In this document: positions 20,301 through 64,000 of the stretch, one piece after another
How the letters are laid out: each line of letters begins with the position of its first letter
How positions within the stretch are numbered: position 1 is the first letter of the stretch
DNA from: Macrostomum lignano
Taxonomy: Eukaryota
Direction: 5' to 3'
DNA length: 64,000 nt
NCBI GenBank assembly: GCA_002269645.1
Contig: NIVC01001476.1
Location: 186,001-250,000 of the forward strand
Translations under genes and position numbers: made by a program
Notes under the pieces: model-generated
Databases searched by the model: none
The model's input: only the letters and a program-made list of their open reading frames with translations
What the model was told of the DNA's origin: nothing

Positions 20301-23300
20301 AGACATCAAAAACAACAGCTGGGTCACTCCATTTTGTTTAGAGTTTATTTCGTTCATTCTTGCATGGAGCTAACATGGAGCTAGCATGGAACTAGCATTG
20401 AGCTAGCATGTAACTAGCATGGAGCTAGCATGTAACTAGCATGTAACTAGCATGGAACTAGCATGGAACTAGCATGGAACTAGCATGTAACTAGCATGTA
20501 ACTAGCATGGAACTAGCATGGAACTAGCATGGAACTAGCATGTAACTAGCATGGAACTAGCATGTAACTAGCATGGAGCTAGCATGTAACTAGCATGGAG
20601 CTAGCATGTAACTAGCATGGAGCTAGCATGTAACTAGCATGGAGCTAGCATGTAACTAGCATGGAGCTAGCATGTAACTAGCATGGAGCTAGCATGTAAC
20701 TAGCATGTAACTAGCATGGAGCTAGCATGTAACTAGCATGGAGCTAGCATGTAACTAGCATGGAGCTAGCATGTAACTAGCATGGAGCTAGCATGTAACT
20801 AGCATGGAGCTAGCATGTAACTAGCATGGAGCTAGCATGTAACTAGCATGGAGCTAGCATGTAACTAGCATGGAACTAGCATGGAGCTAGCATGTAACTA
20901 GCATGGAACTAGCATGTAACTAGCATGGAACTAGCATGGAACTAGCATGTAACTAGCATGGAACTAGCATGGAACTAGCATGGAACTAGCATGGAGCTAG
21001 CATGTAACTAGCATGGAGCTAGCATGTAACTAGCATGGAACTAGCATGGAACTAGCATGGAACTAGCATGGAACTAGCATGGAACTAGCATGGAAGTAGC
21101 ATGGAACTAGCATGGAACTAGCATGGAACTAGCATGGAGCTAACATGGAGCTAGCATGTAACTAGCATGGAACTAGCATGTAGCTAGCATGGTGCTATCA
21201 TGGAGCTAGCATGGAGCTAGCATGGAACTAGCATGTAACTAGCATGGTGCTATCATGCAGCTATCATGGAGCTAGCATGGAACTAGCATGGAACTAGCAT
21301 GGAGCTAGCATGGAACTAGCATGTAACTAGCATGGAACTAGCATGGAACTAGCATGGAGCTAGCATGGAACTAGCATGTAACTAGCATGGAGCTAGCATG
21401 GAACTAGCATGGAACTAGCATGGAGCTAACATGGAGCTAGCATGTAACTAGCATGGAGCTAGCATGGAACTAGCATGGAACTAGCATGTAACTAGCATGG
21501 AACTAGCATGGAGCTAGCATGTAACTAGCATGGAGCTAGCATGGAACTAGCATGGAACTAGCATGGAGCTAGCATGTAACTAGCATGGAGCTAGCATGGA
21601 GCTAGCATGGAACTAGCATGTAACTAGCATGGAACTAGCATGGAGCTAGCATGGAACTAGCATGGAACTAGCATGGAACTAGCATGGAACTAGCATGGAA
21701 CTAGCATGGAACTAGCATGGAACTAGCATGGAACTAGCATGGAACTAGCATGTAACTAGCATGGAACTAGCATGGAACTAGCATGGAACTAGCATGGAAC
21801 TAGCATGGAACTAGCATGTAACTAGCATGGAACTAGCATGGAACTAGCATGGAACTAGCATGGAACTAGCATGGAACTAGCATGGAACTAGCATGGAACT
21901 AGCATGGAAGTAGCATGGAACTAGCATGTAACTAGCATGGAACTAGTATGGAGCTAGCATGGAACTAACACTGGAACTCAAAAAGTTCTTAGACACCCCT
22001 CATATCTCTGCATCTGTTCGACCGATTTTGATGATAATTTATACAAACATGGGTCTATATTTTGATGAATTCAGTGCTAGAGTTTCAGCTTGGTCGTATG
22101 GACAGAGCGAAAGCAGTCGATCATTTACTGACGAACCTGCGAAATTAGCAATACGATTTTAAGCACATAACAAAACGTACAAGCTAAAGGGCAAACGGTT
22201 CAAGTTGGCAAGTTCCCAAACTTCAAAAATCAGATCACCAATCATGAAAATCTTCGAAGTAATCACCGTTCCGTTGAATGCACTTGTCATACCGCATCCG
22301 CAGCTCTTCGATCCATCCTAACCACGTGTCTCTAGGAGTCGCTCTGATGAGCCCCTCAACAGCCGTTTGCAGCTCGGGGAAGCTAGCGAACCTCTTGCCT
22401 CTCAGCTGCGCCTTGACGTGTCCAAAAAGACCATAGTCAGACGGTGCCAAATCAGGCGAGTAGGGCGGATGCTGCCACTGCTGGAATCTGAGGCTGTCGA
22501 TGTGAGAGCGAGTGAGGGCTGCCGAGTGCGGCCGGGCATTGTCGCAGTGCAGCAGGACGCCCTTGCGCACGATCCGACGCCGTTGCAGTAGCTCCTGTCT
22601 CAGCCTCGTGAGCTCGTCACAAAACCGCTCGCTGTTCTGTGTCTGGCCCTGGCCGTACCACGTGAACATGAGGGGCCCGCTCGCATCCCAAAAAACACTT
22701 AACATGATCTTCTTGGGATAGGTGCCTGCGCTTTCGACGTCACCGCCGCCGCCACCCCTCGGAAGCCAGGCCCTCGACTCCCGCCGGGAGAGTGGGTCGT
22801 ACAGGGCAAACATGGACTCATCTTGAGTTACAAATCTGCTTTTGAACTCGTCTCCCAGAGCTGAAATTGCCGCCCTTTGTTGCAAGCAGACTTCGTATCG
22901 GCGATTTTTCTGCTCGGCAGTTAGCAGTCTTGGCACCCATCGAGAGACCAGCTTTGACAGACCAAGATGCTCGTGCAGAATTTGGAAGACCGAGCCACAC
23001 GAAATCCCGGCGGCATTGGCCAACTCGTCAATAGTGATGTGGCCGTTTTCACTTACCAGCTCTTCGATCAGGATGGCACTGCTGTCGTTGACTGCAGTAG
23101 CTGGTCGGCCTGAGCGTGGCTTGTCCTGCACGCTCATTTCGCCGTCCTTTCTCTTCCGGACCCAGTTCGCGACGGTTGCTCGACAGCAGGCATCATCTCC
23201 AAAACGGCTGACTAATCTCTGGTGGATAGTGTTCACGGACATTCCTTCGTCCGCAAAAGCAAAAACGATCAGGCGCTGCGAAACTTTATCGCCATATGCA

Positions 23301-26300
23301 CTAGCCATTCTTAAACCATCTGAGGTTGGTTCTGCATCTCAGCATTTCAATCTGACGTTCATTCTGCGCACTCAGTCTAAATGCTGCCTACTGCTTTGTT
23401 CTATCTTTTTTGTCTATGGCTAAACCCTCGCAGCTTGAAAGTAATGATTAATCAATACTCACCGAAAGCTTTTATTCCTCTAAAAACAAGCTGCGATTTC
23501 ACAACCCCCCCCCCCAGTTTAGAGTGAGGTCCAGATCCGATGCTGTTCAAAATCGTATTGCTAATTTCGTAGGTTCGTCAGTGAATGATCGATTGCTTTC
23601 GTTCTGTCTATACGACCAAGCTGAAACTCTAGCACTGAATTAATCAAATATAGACCCATGTTTGTATAAATTCTCATCAAAATCGGTCAAACAGATGCAG
23701 AGATATGAGGGGTGTCTAAGAACTTTTTGAATGCACTAAGGTAGTATAGTTACAGATTTTTGCCCATGGTTAAAACTGACGGATGTGACGTGATTTGCCC
23801 TTCCTACTATGCCATAAAGTTGAAGTTTACTGAAAGCAGAAGTTTTCCAAGTTGCATTGCTATAAAATGGAGCGACTCAATCCAGTGTTTGATGACCTGT
23901 GGTCTCTATTAGTCTTATCCTATTCATTAATTTCCTATTATCTTCTATTAATAATATACTTACCCCATTCTTGTACTGGTAGCTTTTCATATTAACTACC
24001 CATTAGGTGATTGTCTTTTAGTTTAAAACACTCAGTGCTGCCGCAGTGCTGTTAATGTTTTTGATTGTGAATTAAAAATTACGAGTATTCTAGATTAAAA
24101 CAAACTGTGTAAATTGTTCCACATGTACGTGTACTGTACACATTTTCAGGTGAAAGTTTTCTGCATTGCAATTGTCTGCATTTTCTATATTTATCTACTT
24201 TCACTGATGTTGTAAAATTACCTACGCGTGAACTGTGTACTGCATGCTGAGGTGCTTGGCATGTAGGTATTAGACAATTGCATATCAAAGCTTGACAGAC
24301 AGATAGACACATGCAGTGATTCAGAACTTACACACTCAGACAGATCTAAATGCATTCATAAATGCATTATTGACACAGATATCAATTACAGCATTGACTT
24401 GCAGGTCTGTACAGCATTGACAGGCAGATCTTTAATCCATAATCCGCAGGCGGGCAACGAAGGCGGCGACGGCGGCAGCGGCCAAAAAGGCTCCAAAGAT
24501 GACGAGGGCAGCCCGAACAGAATGCAGCGACCCTCCAGCGCCAAAGGCAATCGGCGTCTACGAGACGGTGAGTTGTCATGGTAACGACTTCAACTTTGGA
24601 ATTGTAGCTTATAGAAGTTTCCGGCGAGAAACCGTAGTAAGCTACTCGTATATCCTACTGTAAGAAATGATGCAAAAACAAACTACTAATACTACTTACT
24701 CGCTCACAGCAGCTTCGGGAAATATTACGAAGTAGTTTTGCATTTCCCAGATTTCACAAAATTTTCACTCACCCGTTTTATTTGTACTTTATAAAAGAAG
24801 ACTTTGAAACACCAGTAGGTTTTTTTATAGAAACACTTGTAGAAAGTGGATGTTAAACTTTAAACCTAAGGTAAATGCGTCTGACATCACTTTTCTCGCC
24901 ATTGACACCTCATCGAAAAAATAATAAACCGACGATTGTAGGTCGCCGGGCTCCAGCCAGCGCGGACTCAGGTTGAGTTTTAAATTAAGCACCTGACTTT
25001 TCTTATGCGCAGTGTGAAAATTGGTAAAAATCTTCTGGCAGGCCAGTGGAATATGAATAACATATGCTATATATACTACTGACTGATTTAAGTAGCATCG
25101 ATTAATGCGATATACTATTGTCAACTGGTTTGTCTTCTAACATTAATTATCTGTATCTTCTTAGCATAGCACTGCCTCCGTCTCTGTAGGTTCTTGACAA
25201 TATATACCCATGAATATTCTGGAAGGTGTAGAATGGATTGCTAATCTATCGTCTATGAATAAAGGTGTAGAATGGATTGCTAATCTATCGTCTATGAATA
25301 AAGGTGTAGAATGGATTGCTAATCTATCGTCTTTGAATAAAGGTGTAGAATGGATTGCTAATCTATCGTCTTTGAATAAAGGTGTAGGATTTCTAATCTA
25401 TCGTCTTTGAATAAAGGTGTAGAATGGATTGCTAATTTATCGTCTTTGAATAAAGGTGTAGGATTTCTAATCTATCGTCTTTGAATAAAGGTGTAGAATG
25501 GATTGCTAATCTATCGTCTTTGAATAAAGGTGTAGGATTTCTAATCTATCGTCTTTGAATAAAGGTGTAGAATGGATTGCTAATCTATCGTCTTTAAATA
25601 AAGGTGTAGAATGGATTGCTAATCTATCGTCTTTGAATAAAGGTGTAGAATGGATTGCTAATCTATCGTCTATGAATAAAGGTGTAGAATGGATTGCTAA
25701 TCTATCGTCTATGAATAAAGGTGTAGAATGGATTGCTAATCTATCATCTATGAATAAAGGTGTAGAATGGATTGCTAATCTATCGTCTATGAATAAAGGT
25801 GTAGAATGGATTGCTAATCTATCGTCTATGAATAAAGGTGTAGAATGGATTGCTAATCTATCGTCTATGAATAAAGGTGTAGAATGGATTGCTAATCTAT
25901 CGTCTATGAATAAAGGTGTAGAATGGATTGCTAATCTATCGTCTTTGAATAAAGGTGTAGAATGGAGTGCTAATCTATCGTCTTTGAATAAAGGTGTAGG
26001 ATTGCTAATCTATCGTCTTTGAATAAAGGTGTAGAATGGATTGCCAATCTATCGTCTATGAATAAAGGTGTAGAATGGATTGCTAATCTATCGTCTTTGA
26101 ATAAAGGTGTAGAATGGAGTGCTAATCTATCATCTATGAATAAAGGTGTAGAATGGATTGCTAATCTATCGTCTATGAATAAAGGTGTAGAATGGATTGC
26201 TAATCTATCATCTATGAATAAAGGTGTAGAATGGATTGCTAATCTATCGTCTATGAATAAAGGTGTAGAATGGAGTGCTAATCTATCGTCTTTGAATAAA

Positions 26301-36585: not shown

Positions 36586-37079
36586 TATCTCATCCCTAGC
36601 TTCAGTCACATCTCAATCTCTAGAGGCGCAGGCCTGCTCGATTTGCAGTTACGCTCGTAAAAGAGTTCTAAAGGTACTATATTGTCAATTTAGTCGCATG
36701 ACTGCGAGATTAAATATGACTGTCAGAGAGCAGAAAACCTGTTTCGAATTGCAGCCATAAAGTGAGAACTGGGACAAGTTTAAAAAATTATTTTCCCGCT
36801 TTGAAAACGAAAGGTTTTTGTTCGAAATATTTCTCCAGACAGCAATGTGAGCTTTGCTCGATATGCGTTTATTTGCATTTACAAGCAATGCAGGAAAAAA
36901 AGAAACGACATTAATAATTAAAAAATATTTTTGGATTGTCTGACTTTTACAGCCTGTTTTCAAAAACAAATATTTTTCCCGAAATGTGCTTATCATGCTG
37001 CTTTGGTCAGTAGATTATCATGAATCAGTACACGTACGTGTGATAAAATTCCAAAATAATAATTGTTCCTAAGCACTTA

Positions 37080-38305
37080 GTCCCAGTGCCAGTCCCAGTG
37101 CCAGTCCCAGTGCCAGTCCCAGTGCCAGTCCCAGTGCCAGTTCCAGTACCAGTACCAGTGCCAATGCCAGTCCCAGTGCCAGTCCCAGTGCCAGTCCCAG
37201 TGCCAGTTCCAGTACCAGTACCAGTGCCAATGCCAGTCCCAGTGCCAGTCCCAGTGCCAGTCCCAGTGCCAGTTCCAGTACCAGTACCAGTGCCAATGCC
37301 AGTCCCAGTGCCAGTCCCAGTGCCAGTCCCAGTGCCAGTTCCAGTACCAGTACCAGTGCCAATGCCAGTGCCAGTGCCAGTCCCAGTGCCAGTGCCAGTC
37401 CCAGTCCCAGTGCCAGTGCCAGTTCCAGTACCAGTACCAGTGCCAATGCCAGTGCCAGTGCCAGTCCCAGTGCCAGTCCCAGTGCCAGTTCCAGTACCAG
37501 TACCAGTGCCAATGCCAGTGCCAGTGCCAGTCCCAGTGCCAGTGCCAGTCCCAGTCCCAGTGCCAGTGCCAGTCCCAGTCCCAGTCCCAGTCCCAGTGCC
37601 AGTGCCAGTGCCAGGCCAGTGCCAGTGCCAGCCCCAGTCCCAGTGCCAGTCCCAGTGCCAGTTCCAGTACCAGTACCAGTGCCAATGCCAGTGCCAGTGC
37701 CAGTCCCAGTGCCAGTGCCAGTCCCAGTCCCAGTGCCAGTGCCAGTCCCAGTCCCAGTCCCAGTCCCAGTGCCAGTGCCAGTTCCAGTACCAGTACCAGT
37801 GCCAATGCCAGTGCCAGTGCCAGTCCCAGTGCCAGTCCCAGTGCCAGTTCCAGTACCAGTACCAGTGCCAATGCCAGTGCCAGTGCCAGTCCCAGTGCCA
37901 GTGCCAGTCCCAGTCCCAGTGCCAGTGCCAGTCCCAGTCCCAGTCCCAGTCCCAGTGCCAGTGCCAGTGCCAGGCCAGTGCCAGTGCCAGCCCCAGTCCC
38001 AGTGCCAGTCCCAGTGCCAGTTCCAGTACCAGTACCAGTGCCAATGCCAGTGCCAGTGCCAGTCCCAGTGCCAGTGCCAGTCCCAGTCCCAGTGCCAGTG
38101 CCAGTCCCAGTCCCAGTCCCAGTCCCAGTCCCAGTGCCAGTGCCAGTGCCAGGCCAGTGCCAGTGCCAGTGCCAGCCCCAGTGCCAGTGAAGTGTCAGTC
38201 CCAGCCCCAGTGCCAGTTTTAGTGCCATGCAGTGCCAGTGCCAGTCCCAGCGCCAGTCCCAGTGCCAGTGCCAGTCCCAGTGCCAGTCCCAGTGCCAGTG
38301 CCAGT
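37080..38305. repeat. (CCAGTG/CCAGTC)n hexamer satellite with higher-order blocks
   Basis: ~200 hexamers; marker gttccagtaccagtaccagtgccaatg recurs at 66-bp spacing early in the array. Confidence 0.98.
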
Positions 38306-38537
38306 CTAATCGCTTAGACTGAAATGCTTAAATCTATATGATAGTTCATTGATTTTTATCAGCCTATATTCATTCAAGGTTTATAATCTCTGTTATCAGA
38401 CCCAGGAACTATAGTTGTCTATGGTAACAGTCAATCAGAGCATACTTAACTATTGTTCTCGGCTCCAAAATAACAGTTTGTTTAAGCAACTATCCTCAAT
38501 CCGATCATTTGCAGTAGCCGCACTTCTAAAAAGATCA

Positions 38538-41166
38538 ATGGGTCCTGATGAAGATGACCAGTCGCCAGATATTCACCACTTCTTTATCGATAAGCAAGTG
38601 ATGCTTGATAGCATCAGCAACTTCTGGTTAAATTTTCCATTCTACATTCTTGTTCTACTGACTGCCTACTTTGTACTGAGGTGAGTAGTTTCATGATAAG
38701 CTCGCATCAGTTCTACTGGCTTTTTATGAGAATCTAAATGCATGAAGATGCAACATGAATTGTGGGACTTAGTCATGCACTCCTAGAGGGTCTTCGCGGG
38801 TTTATCGGCCACTGGTGTTTACTGGCTTAGTTTATGCATGGGATGTTGGTGTATTCTGAGTTAGTTTATGAAGTGTTAGTGCATTGTGGGTTAATTTATA
38901 GGGTGTTGGTGTACTCTGGCTTAGTTTATGGGGTGTTGGTGTACTCTGGCTTAGTTTGTAGGGTGTTGGTGTACTCTGGGTTAGTTTATGGGGTGTTGGT
39001 GTATTCTGGGTTAATTTATGGGGTGTTGGTGTACTCTGGGTTAGTTTTTGGGGTGTTGGTGTATTCTGGGTTAGTTTATGGGGTGTTGGTGTATTCTGGG
39101 TTAGTTTATGGGGTGTTGGTGTATTCTGGGTTAGTTTATGGGGTGTTGGTGTATTCTGGGTTAGTTTATGGGGTGTTGGTGTATTATGGGTTAGTTTATG
39201 GGGTGTTGGTGTACGACTTCCGCGCCCTACGCGACCTGGTTACAAGTGGCCGCTTCTGTCTGGCATTTGCCGAGGCGCTAGAAGAACGGCCAGATACAAC
39301 AACCCCAGGCGAATATCCGGACATCAGTGCCGCCATCCAAGCCGCCGCTACAAAAACTCTACCGCTGGTGAAGCCAGCAGAAAGGAGTCGGCCAGTGTGG
39401 CAGAACGACGAAGTGCTGCGGCAGGCCCGAGCTGACAGTGGAGAGACTGCGGAGGAGCGGACAGCCCGCGGAGAAGGAAGACGAGACTCTAGTGGAGGAA
39501 TTTAAAGCCCGGCAACGCGCCGCGGTAGAGACCGCTTTTCAAGAGATCACGGACGCCGGTCCCGACAAGAAACCGCGTGCTGTCTGGTCGGTCGTCAATC
39601 AGCTGACAGGCCGCAAGAGACGCAACGCTCTGAACCTGGCGGGTGACACACCCGAAGAGAGGCGAAACGAGCTGCGGACCTTCTTCGCTGGTATCGTCAA
39701 CGCGCCTCCTCCGCCGCAAAGGGACGACATGTCATGGCCCACGGAGGTTGAGCTGCCAGAGGAGAGCTCCTTTAACATCAGCCCCATCACCATCGACGAA
39801 GTGCTCCAACTTGCAAAGAAGACGCCAGGCAACAAGGCTACTGGACCAGACGACGTGCCTGTCGAGGTGCTGCGCCTCCTGCAAGTCGCGCTGGAAGTCC
39901 CACGAGTGATGAACTACGTGCTAGCTGGGGGCCCCGCCCCTGCTGAGTGGCGGACTGCGCATATCGTCGGGATCCCAAAGAAACCAGGTTCCGTCAAGGT
40001 CGAAGAACATCGCGGGATTTCGCTAATGTCCTGCACAGCTAAGCTATTTAACAGAGTTTTGCTGTCGCGGCTGCAGCCAGTGCTGGACCCATTCCTCCGG
40101 CGCGAGCAAAATGGATTCCGGCCAGGCAAAGGCACCGTGACCAAAATTCTCGCTCTGCGTCGAATTCTAGAAGAGGCCCGCATCCACCAGTCGACCATCA
40201 TCTGCATCTTCGTAGACTTCCTGAAGGCCTTTGACTCGGTGTCGAGGCGGGTCATCGCGAACATCCTGCGCGCGTATCACGTACCCGAGCAGCTGGTGAC
40301 GGCTGTGTTAGCTCTGTAACAGGAAACTAGGGAGGCAGTTGTGACACCGGATGGCCATTCCGACTTCTTCGACACGTCTTCCAGCGTTCTCCAAGGGGAC
40401 ACCTTGGCTCCTTTTCTCTATTCGTCCTGGTCCTGGACTGGGTACTGCGCACTGACCTCCCTGACGACTCCAAAGGATTCTTGCTCTGCCGCAGAACAAG
40501 CAGGCGACACCCCGAGAAGCGACTCTCCGTCCTAGCGTTCGCGAACGATCTAGCGCTGCTGTCTAGCACAGCTGAAGGAGCTCAACGCCTGCTAGACCAA
40601 CTGACGGCGGCGGCCGCTGTGATCGGACTGTCCGTGAATACCAAAAAGAAAATGGTGTTGACCGTGCCGACGGACCTCCCAGCTGAGATCTACTGCCGCT
40701 GCACGAACGTGGTATGGTGGTCAGGTGCCAAGCATCACGGAGGACATGGCACGGCGCAGGGCGCTTGCCTAGGGGCACATTCCGCACCGTGTGGACTGTC
40801 CTGCAGAGCCCCGCGCTGCCGGATCGGCTGAGAGGGCGGCTGTTCCAGGCCGTCATTGAAACCGTCCTCTTTTACGACGGGCTGCTGCTATCCCTTCAAG
40901 GGCTGCGGCGGCTTGGTCAGGCGAGAAGTCTGCGTTTCGTCGACCTGCTTTTAAGAGACGCTGAAATCTCCGACCGCTAGCGGACTCGCTATTCTGCGCA
41001 AATCTGCGCTTGCGCGCGCATTTTGACAGCACCCCAACTTAATTGGCTTGCCCAGGGTTGCTGTAGTTTGTTGTTGTTTGTTGTTGTTGTGTACGACTAA
41101 ACTGAAACATTTTCCAATTTCAGACATCTTGCCGAAGAGACAGCAGAAGTCCGAAGTGAGACCTGA
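38538..41166 (+). CDS. Putative 61-aa single-pass membrane microprotein (2 exons)
   Basis: Exon 38538-38680 MGPDEDDQSPDIHHFFIDKQVMLDSISNFWLNFPFYILVLLTAYFVLR|GTGAGT; exon 41124-41166 (tttcag|A HLAEETAEVRSET*); phase 2 matches; aataaa near 41314. The N-terminus could be longer. Confidence 0.45.
38830..39212. repeat. 30-bp minisatellite
   Basis: gggttagtttatggggtgttggtgtattct units. Confidence 0.95.
39219..41088 (+). mobile_element. 5'-truncated, decayed non-LTR retrotransposon (RTE-like reverse transcriptase)
   Basis: KATGPDDVP, WRTAHIVGIPKK, HRGISLMSCTAKLFNRVLLSRL, EQNGFR, FVDFLKAFDSV, LQGDTLAPFL, FANDLAL (YADD degenerated); frameshifts and a stop at 40317; (GTT)n tail; 10-bp TSD GTGTACGACT (39209-39218, 41089-41098). 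Confidence 0.92.
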
Positions 41167-51604: not shown

Positions 51605-52004
51605 CCAAGCATGCTTTATAATAAGTTTTTCCTTAAGTAGTTATTAATAGGCCTATCAAAGTAAATAAAATTAAAAACTATTTTCACTAGATCTACCTAA
51701 TTTAATGATTGACAATTCAAAGTAATATTCTATTTCTTTTTGCTTTTTGATTGGCTATAAATCACTTAAGTCTTTATAAAACTATTATTTACACTATGGT
51801 GGACCATTGTTTAAATGATAAGAAAGTAATCAATTTCATAACTAAATAGTAATGAATATGTGCTCATCTGCTGAGTTCTTTTTGAGCAACTATTCAAGCT
51901 GTATCTCTCCTATGTGAGCGATCTCAACCTGAAAATTTTTGTCCAAGTTCTCATGTCTCTTGATGTCATAGACAGTCAGCACGCCCTCAGCAGCCAATCA
52001 AATC

Positions 52005-52628
52005 ATGTCAGTCTCCTCTCTGGCCCGCCCCGGCCGATTTCTCTACTTCGGTTTTGGCAGCAACCTGCTGCGTGAGCGGCTTCGTCTGGCCAACAAGTCG
52101 GCCAAATTTCAGGCCACCGGCCGCCTGTCCGGTTATCGGCTGGAATTCGCCGACCCATCGCATTCGCTGCCGCAGTCGGATCGCGATAAAGCGCAGCGCA
52201 CTTGGCACGGCGGCGCGGCCACTATAGTTGAAGCCGACGCCCAGAAGTTTGTCTTTGGCACCGTCTGGTCCCTAGCCGATGGCGACTCCGACTCGTTGGA
52301 CAGTCAGGAAGGCGTCGACAGTGGAATCTACGAGCGAATCAGCGTGACAGTCAGGCTGCTGGACTCCGGGCAGGAGGTCCGGTGCCGCAGCTACCGCATG
52401 GTCCGCTGCCAGCCCATGGCCCCGTCGCCGCACTATCTCGACATCATCCTCCGCGGCGCCGTTCAATCCGGCTTTCCAGCCGACTATGTCGACAATTTGC
52501 GCAAACGGCAGCACAATGGCTACGCTGGCGAGTGCATAAAATACTTTGAAGTGTTGCGGCAGTGCGCGGCAGCCGCTGATGATGTACCGCCATGCCAGAT
52601 TGATGCGCTGCGCGGCCTGCAATTCTGA
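52005..52628 (+). CDS. GGCT: Gamma-glutamylcyclotransferase, single exon, 207 aa
   Basis: FLYFGFGSNL, WHGGAATIVE, VFGTVW, SLDSQEGV (catalytic Glu), PSPHYLDIILRGA, HNGYAG motifs. Confidence 0.95.
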   Translation: MSVSSLARPGRFLYFGFGSNLLRERLRLANKSAKFQATGRLSGYRLEFADPSHSLPQSDRDKAQRTWHGGAATIVEADAQKFVFGTVWSLADGDSDSLDSQEGVDSGIYERISVTVRLLDSGQEVRCRSYRMVRCQPMAPSPHYLDIILRGAVQSGFPADYVDNLRKRQHNGYAGECIKYFEVLRQCAAAADDVPPCQIDALRGLQF

Positions 52629-52674
52629 GTAGCTCTTTTTAATATTCAAAGCTTGAGCTTGTGTAGATGTCGGG

Positions 52675-55570: not shown

Positions 55571-55921
55571 AATACACTTAGCCACCAATACACTTAGCCA
55601 CCAATACACTTAGCCACCAATACACTTAGCCACCAATACACTTAGCCACCAATACACTTAGCCACCAATACACTTAGCCACCAATACACTTAGCCACCAA
55701 TACACTTAGCCACCAATACACTTAGCCAACAATACACTTAGCCACCAATACACTTAGCCACCAATACACTTAGCCAACAATACACTTAGCCACCAATACA
55801 CTTAGCCACCAATACACTTAGCCACCAATACACTTAGCCACCAATACACTTAGCCACCAATTCACTTAGCCACCAATACACTTAGCCACCAATACACTTA
55901 GCCACCAATACACTTAGCCAC
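55571..55921. repeat. 16-bp minisatellite (~22 copies)
   Basis: tacacttagccaccaa unit. Confidence 0.98.
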
Positions 55922-56388
55922 GCGAAAAATATGGGTATACATTAAAAAGAAGCCGCCTTCTCCGCGTTCTCTAGTAGCCTCACTCTACATCAATTGTCCA
56001 ATAATTGTCCAATAATAATTGATGTAGCCTGACAATTAGAAAGTCAGGGCCGCTGTACACACTGCGTGAGCGATTGTATTAGTGCGTGCATTGCTCATGT
56101 TTTATTGGATTTCTTAGGTCCCAGTTTGCCAGACAAAACAGAAACGACTCAAATCATACAGTTGAATCGGTTTACCAGCAATTACGTAAACCTCGAATAT
56201 TATAACACTTTAGCCTTATTTTGAGCCAGCTATACTGGAGTATTAAAAAACCATCGCTTTCAAGTGACGATTAACCTTCAGCGCATCGTTAAGGATTAGC
56301 GATTAAAAGAAACTTTATTTCTTTTGTCTGTCTTATTATCAAAATTGCAACCTGATGCCGCACAACATGTTGTCAGGCCGATAGTCTA

Positions 56389-57577
56389 TCACTGCCGACC
56401 GCGGCCAGGCAGTGGGCAGAGGCACACGCACTTGGAGCCGTACCAGCCTTGCTGATAGTATCCGTAACAGTCCGAGGCGGCCAGTCCAGAGCCAAACTTG
56501 CGCCGGCATGTTCGGGTGCAGTACAGCATTAGCTGTTTGTAGTACTTGTCTGCGAAAAGTGGCCGGCGGGGGTCGGAGAAGTGCTGGCGTCACACAGTAT
56601 AATTTAATGAAGAGTACATGTATAGCAAGAGAAGAATTTAAAGCGAATCTCTTAGCTTGTATAGCGTGTGCGAAAAGGGTTGCATCCTGATAAGGAACTT
56701 ATAGATCTGTCGTCTTTTAGTATGCATGCTTTCATAGAACGCATACATGTAGCGCTGAATAAGGGTTCCGTCATACACTGCAGGATCTGCACGTAATGTG
56801 GCACCTTCCAATGTGACGCCCTCTCGGACATCTGTGACGCCTTCCCGGACATCTATAGCGCCCTCCCGGACATCTATAGCGCCCTCCCGGACATCTATAG
56901 CGCCCTCCCGGCTCCCGGGCATACTGTGGCGCCCTCTCGGACATCTATAGCGCCCTCCCGGACATACTGTGGCGCCCTCCCGGACATCTATAGCGCTCTC
57001 CCGGACATACTGTGACGCCTTCCCGGACATCTATAGCGCCCTCCCGGACATACTGTGACGCCCTCCCGAACATACTGTGACGCCCTCTCGGACATCTATT
57101 GCGCCCTCCCGGATATACTGTGGCGCCCTCCCGGACATACTGTGACGCCCTCTCGGACATCTATTGCGCCCTCCCGGATATACTGTGGCGCCCTCCCGGA
57201 CATACTGTGACGCCCTCTCGGACATCTATGGCGCCCTCCCGGATATACTGTGGCGCCCTCCCGGACATCTATAGCGCCCTCCCGGACATACTGTGGCGCA
57301 CTTCCTAACAGCGCCATCAACCAAGTTTAATCGGGTCGAAGTTTGTACATGTAATAGAAGGCTGAATCCAAATCGAACCTATACGGTTCGTACATGCAAA
57401 TGCATCAAGGCGTTTACGCAGATTGAAGACCGATCGCTTATCTCGACTGCCCCCCAGTAATCCGGCAGGGCGAGCTTTTCCGGTAGTCATTTCTGGCACA
57501 GCTGAGCACAGGTGAGCTGTCAGCTGGAGCATTGCGCAGCAGCAGATCAGCATAGCAACAGCCGACATTGAACGCAT
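56389..57577 (-). CDS. Secreted cysteine-rich prepropeptide with CS-alpha-beta (defensin/macin/toxin-like) signature, 138 aa, 2 exons
   Basis: Exon 57577-57322 MRSMSAVAMLICCCAMLQLTAHLCSA...RDKRSVFNLRKR-LDAFACTNRIGSIWIQPSITCTNFDPIKL|GTTGAT (weak donor, phase 1); exon 56549-56389 (ttttcgcag|) DKYYKQLMLYCTRTCRRKFGSGLAASDCYGYYQQGWYGSKCVCLCPLPGRGRQ*. Confidence 0.7.
56812..57300. repeat. ~21-bp degenerate minisatellite in the intron of the Cys-rich peptide gene
   Basis: gccctcccggacatctatagc / gccctcccggacatactgtgac units. Confidence 0.93.
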
Positions 57578-59367
57578 AATCACTGTAGCAACCACGCGGA
57601 TGTCTAAAATAACGTGCCGAAGTAAAAACGAGCGGAGGGATTTTTCAAAGAAGAAATCTGCAACAGAATCGCGGAGCCGTCGATAGATTTTAAAGGGTAA
57701 CAGCTACGTGTAGCCGAAGCTACCGGAGGATCATGATTGGCTGCTATGCTATTAACAGCTGCATAGAACCAAGCAATTTGCAGTCTTCTCAGCTTTCAAC
57801 TATCTACAGTCAGGCTCTGCGTGGGCGGCTGGCAGCCCGTATATCCATGGCAGCAGATGCGCCGTTCGCGTGATCTATAGTACTTTATTCGATCTGCAGT
57901 TACAACAAGGAATCGAAATGGAGTAAAATGATACTAATCTTTTTCTACGAGCGTGATTTCAACTGCACCGCCCTACTCTTTGGGCGAAACTGGACGACAT
58001 GAGAAATTGGTATTCCTTGGAGACATGCTAGCTATAGTATGAGCCATTGTTGGAATGAATTCAGCTTGACGTACGACTTTCGTCTCTGCCTGCGTTCACT
58101 TCGTTAGACCGCTATTTTTATATCTTCTCTGGATCCTGGACCCGATCTCTATATTCAGCTAGGATGTAAGAGTATGTGTGGCTCAAGATCCAATAAATTC
58201 CCTTCCTAGCAACTAAAACTCAGTATCTACATCTAAATCAATAGATACGTACTGGCACTTGACGACTTAATTGATTTGTAGAGTGGCATAGACTAACAGC
58301 TAGCTCAGGCTCTGCAGAGCCGATTAAATAGCTATAGTGCATATCTGTAACGACTATGAGCAAAACAATTAGCTCACGGATTAATGTGAAATCTAAAATA
58401 GATTGATAATATACCCTAATGGGGCTAATAGAATCCATTAAAATGCATTACACTTATTGACAAGCTAGCTATAGCTGAGATCCACTTCACTCATGGATTG
58501 GCAATGTCACTTGGACAGCAAATTGGAGCAAGTAGGTTTTTTCCACGAGATTTATCTATCAATTAATATTTTTAATTTCCAAAGGCTCGTTTACTCCGTC
58601 ATGAAGTCAAGGTAATTTTAGAGCGATCATGCGGCTTGCACATGATTTCGTCCCTTTGTACTTTTACCATAGACAAATTCCGCAAAGCGAGCTTTTTACC
58701 ATCGACAAGACTCAGTCGAGAATGAAAATGAAAAAACACGTAAAACAGCAAAAATGAGTTATCGGTAGCATTTCAGCCGACAAGAATAGCGTTGTCATCG
58801 TCGCATATAGCAAGCAGATAAGTTAAAATTTGCAACACAAAATGCATTATTAAATCCCAAAATTTCAGTTTCTATAAGGAACCCGTGTATTATAATTTAT
58901 AAGTTTATATTTCAGTATTGATAACATACTCGACAATTGACAAAAACAGTGCACTAAAGAAAATGATTACAAATACACATTCAAGTGCTTTGTACTAGAT
59001 ATATTCAATTAAAAATCATGTGACTACTAGTATTCAATATTACTCAAATAAGCTGCACATACAAACAAATATTTAGTTAGTTAACGTACGCGCATTAATC
59101 TGTTATGTAGCTTACTTATTATTGCTACTACAAGTAGTGCAAACGGATGTTGAAAACAGAACACAAACGGGCGAAGTGCGTGGAATTAATTAAATGTATG
59201 CTGAAAATTTAACAAACAACAAAGTGAAACTCGCTAAACAATTTTCATTTTATTTAACACAAGTTTTGATCCTGGTATTAAATATTTTGGTTTAATTAGC
59301 CTGGTTACACAAAGTAGGCAATAGATATTAGATCATAGTAGAGACAAAATAACTCGGATTAAGTTTC

Positions 59368-64000
<4,633 letters not shown>

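What the first reader, a model, noticed from the sequence alone, without database searches (positions are those of the whole stretch)
56389..57577. Unannotated cationic 8-Cys peptide with CS-alpha-beta signature: candidate new defensin/macin-like antimicrobial or toxin
Seen: signal peptide, propeptide with DKR and RKR sites, then an 82-aa mature peptide (net about +7 by K/R minus D count) with Cys at 6, 21, 40, 44, 57, 70, 72, 74: CxxxC ... C ... CxCxC, aromatic-rich, C-terminal GRGRQ. Exon 2 is in a frame the ORF track misses. Knowledge: CxxxC helix plus CxC strand defines the CS-alpha-beta fold of invertebrate defensins, macins, ASABF and scorpion toxins. The long N-terminal two-Cys extension and CxCxC ending do not match the spacings I recall. 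Inference: a lineage-specific defence peptide family. A small spacer peptide SVFNL would also be released.
Basis: partly seen in the sequence, partly recalled or inferred. Interest (0 to 1): 0.8.

Follow-up and report, generated by a model that had tools for sequence, protein, structure and literature searches.

The report
Flatworm secreted six-cysteine cationic peptide

Summary
The gene is real, on the minus strand at 57577..56389, and the organism is Macrostomum lignano. It has a signal peptide, a pro-region ending in a furin-type RDKR site, and a cationic cysteine-rich C-terminal domain in exon 2.

Four UniProt M. lignano models join SVFNL directly to exon 2, using the donor C|GTAAAC (exon end 57418). 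Spliced that way, the window encodes A0A1I8JLN2 exactly (106 aa). The 96 nt in between has GC3 0.31, like non-coding flanks, against about 0.7 for local exons. No database protein contains it, and AlphaFold2 models it poorly.

The mature peptide is 58 aa, net +8, with the pattern C-x3-C-x12-C-x12-C-x-C-x-C.

AlphaFold2 places CxxxC in a long helix and CxC in the last hairpin strand, which is CS-alpha-beta-like. Foldseek, PDB, Pfam and a profile comparison with mytilins found no significant match, and an exhaustive search found no relatives outside M. lignano. This is a lineage-restricted defensin-like candidate of untested function.

The parts
57418..57577 (-). Coding exon 1 (160 nt, ends in phase 1). 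It encodes the signal peptide, the pro-region and the first 5 residues (SVFNL) of the mature peptide.
   Evidence: ATG at 57577. The exon end at 57418 is inferred from the SVFNL|H junction in UniProt models P0001, P0003 and P0004.
57500..57577 (-). Signal peptide, codons 1-26 (MRSMSAVAMLICCCAMLQLTAHLCSA); predicted cleavage after CSA.
   Evidence: Read from the sequence using the -3/-1 rule; no signal-peptide predictor was run. UniProt names the product 'Secreted protein'.
57434..57499 (-). Pro-region, codons 27-48 (VPEMTTGKARPAGLLGGSRDKR), ending in an R-x-K-R furin/proprotein-convertase motif.
   Evidence: Sequence. The motif assignment rests on established knowledge and cleavage is inferred.
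56550..57417 (-). Intron (868 nt) with donor GTAAAC and acceptor ttttcgcAG.
   Evidence: Gene-model junction and sequence.
57322..57417 (-). 96-nt open read-through of the intron start. It ends at an in-frame TGA.
   Evidence: GC 0.41 and GC3 0.31, against about 0.7 for local exons. Absent from every database protein. pLDDT 38-58 in the 82-aa model.
56817..57299 (-). Intronic minisatellite of about 11 copies of a 43-bp unit, made of two related 21/22-bp halves.
   Evidence: Tandem Repeats Finder.
56389..56549 (-). Coding exon 2, including the stop codon. It encodes (H)KYYKQLMLYCTRTCRRKFGSGLAASDCYGYYQQGWYGSKCVCLCPLPGRGRQ* with all six cysteines.
   Evidence: GC3 0.72; the only match to the Cys pattern in the window apart from a simple repeat.
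56314..56319 (-). AATAAA polyadenylation signal about 70 nt after the stop codon.
   Evidence: Sequence.
57604..57612 (-). Acceptor-like ttattttAG, 26 nt upstream of the ATG. It is a candidate spliced-leader trans-splice site or 5'UTR acceptor.
   Evidence: Sequence. The chimeric model P0004 splices into it. About 30-39% of M. lignano genes are trans-spliced. Not verified.

Best explanation
The locus is a two-exon Macrostomum lignano gene (UniProt A0A1I8JLN2-type, 106 aa) for a pre-pro-peptide.

A 26-residue signal peptide directs it into the secretory pathway. A 22-residue pro-region is removed at RDKR|S by a furin-like convertase (inferred). The released peptide is 58 residues, 6.7 kDa, pI about 9.5, net +8 and tyrosine-rich, with six cysteines spaced C-x3-C-x12-C-x12-C-x-C-x-C.

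It most likely folds as a long N-terminal amphipathic helix carrying CxxxC, pinned by two parallel disulfides to the CxC of the last strand of a C-terminal beta-hairpin. The third disulfide would run from the Cys at the start of the hairpin to the extra C-terminal Cys. This is a CS-alpha-beta-like (cis-defensin-like) scaffold with a relocated third bridge.

The most likely role is as an extracellular effector of the host-defence (antimicrobial) type, acting through cationic and aromatic binding to microbial envelopes.

The gene structure and the peptide's composition are shown. Processing, disulfide pairing and activity are inferred.
For: Gene and species:
- The only relatives are M. lignano proteins. 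P0003 is identical to the window when it is spliced at 57418/56549.

Splice junction:
- The same donor is used in four models.
- The skipped 96 nt has non-coding composition.
- In M. lignano, 65% of donors are GT[G/A]AG. GTAAAC departs from this at one position; GTTGAT departs at all three.
- All five DHX15 donors in this window are GTNAG.

Coding quality:
- Exon 2 has GC3 0.72, and AATAAA lies about 70 nt after the stop.
- Paralogous models differ at 3 residues in the signal and pro-region but at 0-1 residues in the mature peptide.

Fold:
- AlphaFold2 on the single 58-aa sequence gave pLDDT 73.9, a helix at 2-24 containing C16 and C20, and a hairpin at 38-42/45-49 containing C46 and C48.
- The top-ranked near-misses are both CS-alpha-beta antimicrobial peptides: mytilin 2EEM by Foldseek and insect defensin 2NY8 by phmmer.

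Charge and composition.
Against: - No transcript, expression or activity data could be reached. The splice junction rests on gene models from one annotation pipeline, which also produced a chimeric model (P0004), plus base composition.
- No structural or sequence match is significant: Foldseek E>=4, PDB E=0.96, Pfam nothing relevant, hhalign against mytilins 4%.
- The two AlphaFold2 models disagree on the hairpin register. No coordinates were available, so disulfide pairing was not checked.
- The usual N-terminal cysteine of CS-alpha-beta defensins is absent.
- From my own knowledge, many orphan secreted peptides of this species are reproductive (prostate or seminal-fluid) products, so a defence role is only a plurality guess.
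Confidence: 0.45

Rival explanations
1. The reader's 138-aa, 8-Cys isoform is real, either as the main product or as an alternative 5'-splice-site isoform. It would use G|GTTGAT at 57322 and add a 32-residue two-Cys N-terminal extension and an RKR cleavage site.
For: Both donors are in phase 1 and keep the frame. The 96 nt is open, and the Cys count stays even at 8. Both donors are non-consensus, and GTT donors do occur here (DHX15 GTTAGT).
Against: No protein among 5.8 billion contains the 32-aa segment, and all four gene models skip it. GC3 is 0.31, with P about 7e-6 under coding composition. An open run of 32 codons is expected by chance about one time in five, by my own calculation. The extension has pLDDT 38-58 and lowers confidence in the core. 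GTTGAT mismatches GT[G/A]AG at all three positions.
Confidence: 0.08
2. The same 58-aa peptide is not an immune effector. It is instead a reproductive or glandular secretion (for example a prostate or seminal-fluid protein) or a signalling peptide or hormone acting on a receptor.
For: Its architecture of signal peptide, convertase site and compact disulfide-rich peptide is also that of prohormones and seminal peptides. It is an orphan, lineage-restricted gene, as is typical of fast-evolving reproductive proteins (my own knowledge). The C-terminal PLPGRGRQ could be trimmed or amidated (speculative).
Against: No match to any neuropeptide or hormone family in Pfam. GRGRQ is not a canonical G-K/R-K/R amidation site. 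The high net charge and aromatic content are more typical of membrane-active peptides.
Confidence: 0.25
3. The peptide is a toxin-like ion-channel modulator, in the manner of scorpion CS-alpha-beta toxins, used against prey, predators or competitors.
For: The CxxxC...CxC signature, the basic surface and a propeptide ending in a basic site all occur in toxins.
Against: No similarity to any toxin family. From my own knowledge, M. lignano is a small diatom feeder with no known venom apparatus. The first Cys and the spacing of K+ and Na+ channel toxins are absent.
Confidence: 0.12
4. It is not a functional gene but a chance ORF pair or decaying duplicate that an automatic pipeline propagated.
For: There is no transcript evidence in hand. 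One paralogous model is frame-shifted (P0002) and one is chimeric (P0004). There are no homologues outside the species.
Against: Intact ORFs with identical cysteines occur in at least three models. Exon 2 has coding-like GC3. The locus has a canonical acceptor, a polyA signal and a textbook signal peptide plus RxKR site.
Confidence: 0.07

Closest known systems
Mytilins (mussel CS-alpha-beta antimicrobial peptides; Pfam PF10690; structure 2EEM)
   Same: Both are cationic. Both have a CxxxC helix and a Tyr-rich hairpin ending in CxCxC: GYYxxxxYxxxCxCxC aligns at 7 of 16 identities. Mytilin is the top-ranked, though non-significant, Foldseek hit.
   Different: Mytilins have 8 Cys (CxxxCxxxC...C...CxCxCxxC), a short helix and a C-terminal acidic pro-region. 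This peptide has 6 Cys, a 23-residue helix, a 12-residue loop and an N-terminal pro-region. hhalign probability is only 4%, so no homology is shown.
Arthropod and mollusc defensins (cis-defensins; e.g. Anopheles defensin 2NY8)
   Same: Both have the precursor plan of signal peptide, pro-region ending in KR, then the mature peptide (my own knowledge). Both have CxxxC in a helix and CxC in the last strand. 2NY8 is the only PDB sequence hit, at E=0.96.
   Different: The N-terminal Cys that bonds to strand 1 is missing, and an extra Cys follows the CxC. The helix is much longer. There is no Pfam Defensin_2 hit.
Macins, ASABF and scorpion toxins
   Same: They share only the generic CS-alpha-beta signature and the positive charge.
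   Different: Cys number and spacing differ, and no sequence or structure match of any strength was found.

Membership tests
CS-alpha-beta / cis-defensin superfamily | A CxxxC motif located in an alpha-helix | tested here: met
   C16-TRT-C20 lies inside the predicted helix 2-24. This is a single-sequence AlphaFold2 model with pLDDT 73.9, so it is a prediction only.
CS-alpha-beta / cis-defensin superfamily | A CxC motif in the final beta-strand | tested here: met
   C46-V-C48 lies in the predicted strand 45-49. The strand register differs in the 82-aa model.
CS-alpha-beta / cis-defensin superfamily | Two parallel disulfides tying the final strand to the helix (Ci-Cj, Ci+4-Cj+2); definition as given in PMC7203481 | not testable with these tools
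   No model coordinates are returned. Testing needs disulfide mapping or NMR.
CS-alpha-beta / cis-defensin superfamily | Significant structural similarity to solved CS-alpha-beta structures | tested here: inconclusive
   Foldseek against PDB gave a best hit of mytilin 2EEM at E=4.1, probability 0.04, TM 0.27/0.37. Foldseek is weak on peptides this small.
Mytilin / myticin family (PF10690) | Sequence or profile homology, the 8-Cys array, and a C-terminal anionic pro-region | tested here: not met
   No Pfam hit and hhalign probability 4.1% over 16 columns. This peptide has 6 Cys and an N-terminal pro-region.
Arthropod defensin (Defensin_2) | The C1...C2xxxC3...C4...C5xC6 array with the C1-C4 bridge, and a profile match | tested here: not met
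   There is no Cys N-terminal of the CxxxC in the annotated mature peptide. No Pfam hit, and PDB phmmer E=0.96.
Macins / ASABF / scorpion toxins | Family-specific Cys spacing and a profile match | tested here: not met
   No hits in Pfam, PDB sequences or Foldseek.
Convertase-processed secretory pre-pro-peptides (a general class, not a family) | An N-terminal signal peptide followed by an RxK/RR site before the mature peptide | tested here: met
   The MRSMSAVAMLICCCAMLQLTAHLCSA h-region and the RDKR|S site are read from the sequence. Cleavage itself is not testable here.

The most novel reading that the evidence does not exclude
This is the first cis-defensin-like (CS-alpha-beta) host-defence peptide family of Platyhelminthes. 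It arose or diverged beyond recognition within Macrostomum. It has an unusual disulfide array in which the ancestral N-terminal bridge is replaced by a hairpin-closing bridge to a C-terminal CxCxC, and a long cecropin-like amphipathic helix is fused to the core.
Probability: 0.25. Interest if true: 0.55.

Novelty: new variant of a known kind. Interest (0 to 1): 0.33.

Why it matters
Flatworm antimicrobial effectors appear to be little catalogued: two full-text searches pairing Macrostomum lignano with antimicrobial peptides or defensins found nothing relevant, and one review notes that flatworm genomes lack big defensins. If the peptide really has a CS-alpha-beta fold and antimicrobial activity, it would extend that scaffold to a transgenic, regenerating flatworm model and give a new disulfide variant for peptide engineering. 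If it is instead a reproductive or signalling peptide, it is one more lineage-specific secreted orphan. In either case the practical result is a corrected gene structure: 6 Cys rather than 8, and no RKR site or spacer peptide.

Tried and rejected
- Pfam on the 138-, 82-, 58- and 37-aa versions gave nothing relevant. The one hit, HTH_CHD6-9 at E=0.21, is noise.
- PDB sequence search gave nothing for the 138-aa version and one hit at E=0.96 for the 58-aa version.
- Exhaustive phmmer against 1.84 billion representatives returned only P0001 and P0002, plus two translated tandem repeats (P0005, P0006) that I reject as spurious.
- The look-up of encoding contigs found nothing on record for P0001, P0002, the 106-aa product, the 92- and 86-aa exon-1 ORFs and the 46-aa exon-2 ORF. 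No paralogous DNA or transcript contigs could be obtained.
- An exact exon-2 24-mer was absent from metagenome contigs.
- Literature searches for the peptide sequence, the UniProt accessions and Macrostomum with defensin or antimicrobial peptide found nothing relevant. The Wasik 2015 genome paper is not held.
- Foldseek on the 82-aa model gave only unrelated weak hits.
- A generic (human-like) donor weight matrix, computed by hand from remembered frequencies, scores both candidate donors as weak and nearly equal. Other phase-1 GTs in the 96 nt (CAT|GTACGA, TAG|GTTCGA) score higher. Splice-site strength alone therefore cannot settle the junction, and I did not rely on it.
- Cys-pattern and tblastn scans of the window found no second copy.
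- Rfam found nothing in the window.

Full report
**What is in the sequence**

On the minus strand an ATG at 57577 opens an ORF encoding MRSMSAVAMLICCCAMLQLTAHLCSA-VPEMTTGKARPAGLLGGSRDKR-SVFNL.... About 0.9 kb downstream lies a pyrimidine-rich acceptor (cttttcgcAG, AG at 56551-56550). After it a different frame encodes KYYKQLMLYCTRTCRRKFGSGLAASDCYGYYQQGWYGSKCVCLCPLPGRGRQ*, with the stop at 56391-56389. An AATAAA sits at 56319-56314.

The 82-aa "mature" peptide has exactly the Cys positions and net charge he listed. His description of the letters is therefore accurate.

**Whose gene it is**

A word-indexed search of 5.8 billion proteins found only two clusters, both from Macrostomum lignano and both named "Secreted protein" in UniRef. 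The cluster look-up added A0A1I8JLN2 (P0003, 106 aa) and a 397-aa model, A0A1I8I619 (P0004).

An exhaustive phmmer search of 1.84 billion representatives added only two translated tandem repeats, which I discard. The window is therefore M. lignano DNA, and the family is not detectable outside that species in these databases.

The neighbours fit a flatworm chromosome:
- The 3' half of DHX15/PRP43 lies upstream on the same strand, from 64000 to its stop near 59369.
- A GGACT/AIG2-like gene lies at 52005..52628, with a mariner-type transposase and a reverse-transcriptase fragment elsewhere in the window.

**The splice junction**

P0001, P0003 and P0004 all read ...RDKRSVFNL|HKYYKQLMLYC.... Spliced this way, the window encodes P0003 without a single difference. 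P0002 uses the same donor with a downstream acceptor, in a frame-shifted paralogous copy.

It is the last GT before the in-frame TGA, which is what maximal ORF extension would pick. Four lines of evidence separate the two junctions.

- **Database proteins.** None contains the 32 residues RKRLDAFACTNRIGSIWIQPSITCTNFDPIKL, although they were part of the query.
- **Composition.** The 96 nt has GC 0.41 and GC3 0.31.
  - For comparison, exon 2 has GC3 0.72, the first part of exon 1 has 0.55, four DHX15 exons have 0.69-0.73, GGACT has 0.72, and non-coding flanks have GC 0.40-0.45.
  - Ten or fewer G/C-ending codons out of 32 has P=7e-6 at 0.70, P=0.006 at 0.55, and P=0.15 at flank-like 0.42.
- **Donor consensus.** In M. 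lignano, 122,399 of 187,627 donor regions (65%) carry GT[G/A]AG (PMC8629364).
  - The five DHX15 donors in this window are GTGAGT (three times), GTTAGT and GTGAGC.
  - GTAAAC departs from the consensus only at +5, while GTTGAT departs at +3, +4 and +5.
- **Structure prediction.** In AlphaFold2 the extension is poorly modelled (block pLDDT 38, 56, 58). It pulls the mean down to 60.1, against 73.9 for the 58-aa peptide.

Two caveats apply. All four models come from one pipeline, which also produced the chimera P0004: DHX15 C-terminus, then the peptide, then antisense GGACT. By a generic weight matrix both donors are weak. I could not reach any transcript data.

I put the annotated junction at about 85-90%.

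**The product**

The pre-pro-peptide is 106 aa. Residues 1-26 form the signal peptide (cleavage after CSA is inferred by rule). Residues 27-48 form the pro-region, which ends in R-D-K-R, a canonical R-x-K/R-R convertase motif. Cleavage there is inferred.

The mature peptide, residues 49-106, is SVFNLHKYYKQLMLYCTRTCRRKFGSGLAASDCYGYYQQGWYGSKCVCLCPLPGRGRQ. It is 58 aa, 6.7 kDa, pI 9.5, with K+R 9 and D+E 1, seven Tyr, and Cys at 16, 20, 33, 46, 48 and 50.

The paralogous models differ at three positions in the signal and pro-region (C24S, T32A, P37T). They differ at none or one (G88N) in the mature part. This hints weakly at constraint on the mature peptide.

**Fold**

Single-sequence AlphaFold2 gives a helix at 2-24 that holds C16xxxC20, a short helix at 29-32, and a hairpin at 38-42/45-49 that holds C46xC48. 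The 82-aa run keeps the helix and hairpin but shifts the register, so that C33 faces C50.

This is the sequence and secondary-structure signature of the cysteine-stabilised alpha/beta motif. The defining feature is two parallel disulfides from the last strand to the helix (PMC7203481). The pairing C16-C46, C20-C48, C33-C50 is my inference, because no coordinates were available.

Every comparison with known structures and families fell short of significance:
- Foldseek against PDB found nothing significant. The top-ranked hit is mytilin 2EEM at E=4.1, probability 0.04.
- The 82-aa model gave only unrelated hits.
- phmmer against PDB gave a single insect defensin, 2NY8, at E=0.96.
- Pfam gave nothing relevant.
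- A profile of seven real mytilins aligned by hhalign only over GYYxxxxYxxxCxCxC, with probability 4%.

The peptide therefore resembles CS-alpha-beta peptides in motif and predicted topology, but it cannot be filed in any known family. It lacks the N-terminal cysteine of classical defensins, has an extra C-terminal one, and has an unusually long helix.

**Function**

Nothing was measured. The architecture is a signal peptide, an RxKR pro-region and a compact, highly cationic, aromatic, disulfide-rich peptide. The only near-misses are antimicrobial peptides. A secreted host-defence effector is therefore the single most likely role, at about 40-45%.

A reproductive, glandular or signalling peptide is the main rival (about 25%). 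A toxin-like channel modulator (about 12%) and a non-functional model (about 7%) follow.

**Novelty and interest**

The protein already exists in UniProt as an uncharacterised model, so the gene is not new. The new points are the corrected reading of the locus and the recognition of a CS-alpha-beta-like motif in a flatworm orphan.

It is a reasonable candidate for experiment, but it is ordinary among lineage-specific secreted cysteine-rich peptides until a fold or an activity is shown.

Noticed in passing
window 57604-57612 (minus strand): An acceptor-like ttattttAG lies 26 nt upstream of the peptide's ATG, with no obvious upstream exon. It may be a spliced-leader trans-splice site or a 5'UTR acceptor. 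It does not match the enriched [T/C]TNCAG trans-acceptor motif reported for M. lignano.
   Followed up: partly
window 59369-64000 (minus strand): The 3' half of a DHX15/PRP43 DEAH-box helicase gene, with at least 6 exons. Its donors are GTGAGT (three times), GTTAGT and GTGAGC. The stop is near 59369, about 1.8 kb upstream of the peptide gene on the same strand.
   Followed up: yes
window 59590-59850 and 60250-60600 (minus strand): Two DHX15 introns carry minisatellites with units of about 35 bp, as the peptide gene's intron does (43-bp unit, 56817-57299). This fits the report that tandem repeats make up about 15% of the M. lignano genome.
   Followed up: partly
window 55571-55921: A very regular 16-bp tandem repeat (AATACACTTAGCCACC, 22 copies, 98% identity) lies about 470 bp downstream of the peptide gene.
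   Followed up: no
window 51990-52631 and UniProt A0A1I8I619 (P0004): The 397-aa UniProt 'WSC domain-containing protein' model is a chimera of the DHX15 C-terminus, the peptide precursor, and the antisense translation of a GGACT/AIG2-like gene (52005-52628, plus strand).
   Followed up: yes
UniProt A0A1I8FBK7 (P0002), paralogous locus not in the window: This model uses the same GTAAAC donor but an acceptor 17 nt further downstream, and it reads exon 2 out of frame. It implies at least two indels relative to the window, so the locus is either a decaying paralogue or an assembly error.
   Followed up: partly
window 37077-38317: A long simple repeat translates as (CQSQ)n/(CQ)n in several frames. 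It produces large spurious ORFs and false matches to the Cys pattern.
   Followed up: no
window 22235-23308 and 39438-40319: A mariner/Tc1-type DDE transposase ORF (357 aa) and a reverse-transcriptase fragment mark transposable elements in the window.
   Followed up: no
window 56650-57420 (minus strand): The palindrome-containing motif ACATGTA recurs four times in the non-repeat parts of the intron (tgcATGTACgaa, ttACATGTACaaa, ctACATGTAtgc, atACATGTActc). Its significance is unknown.
   Followed up: no
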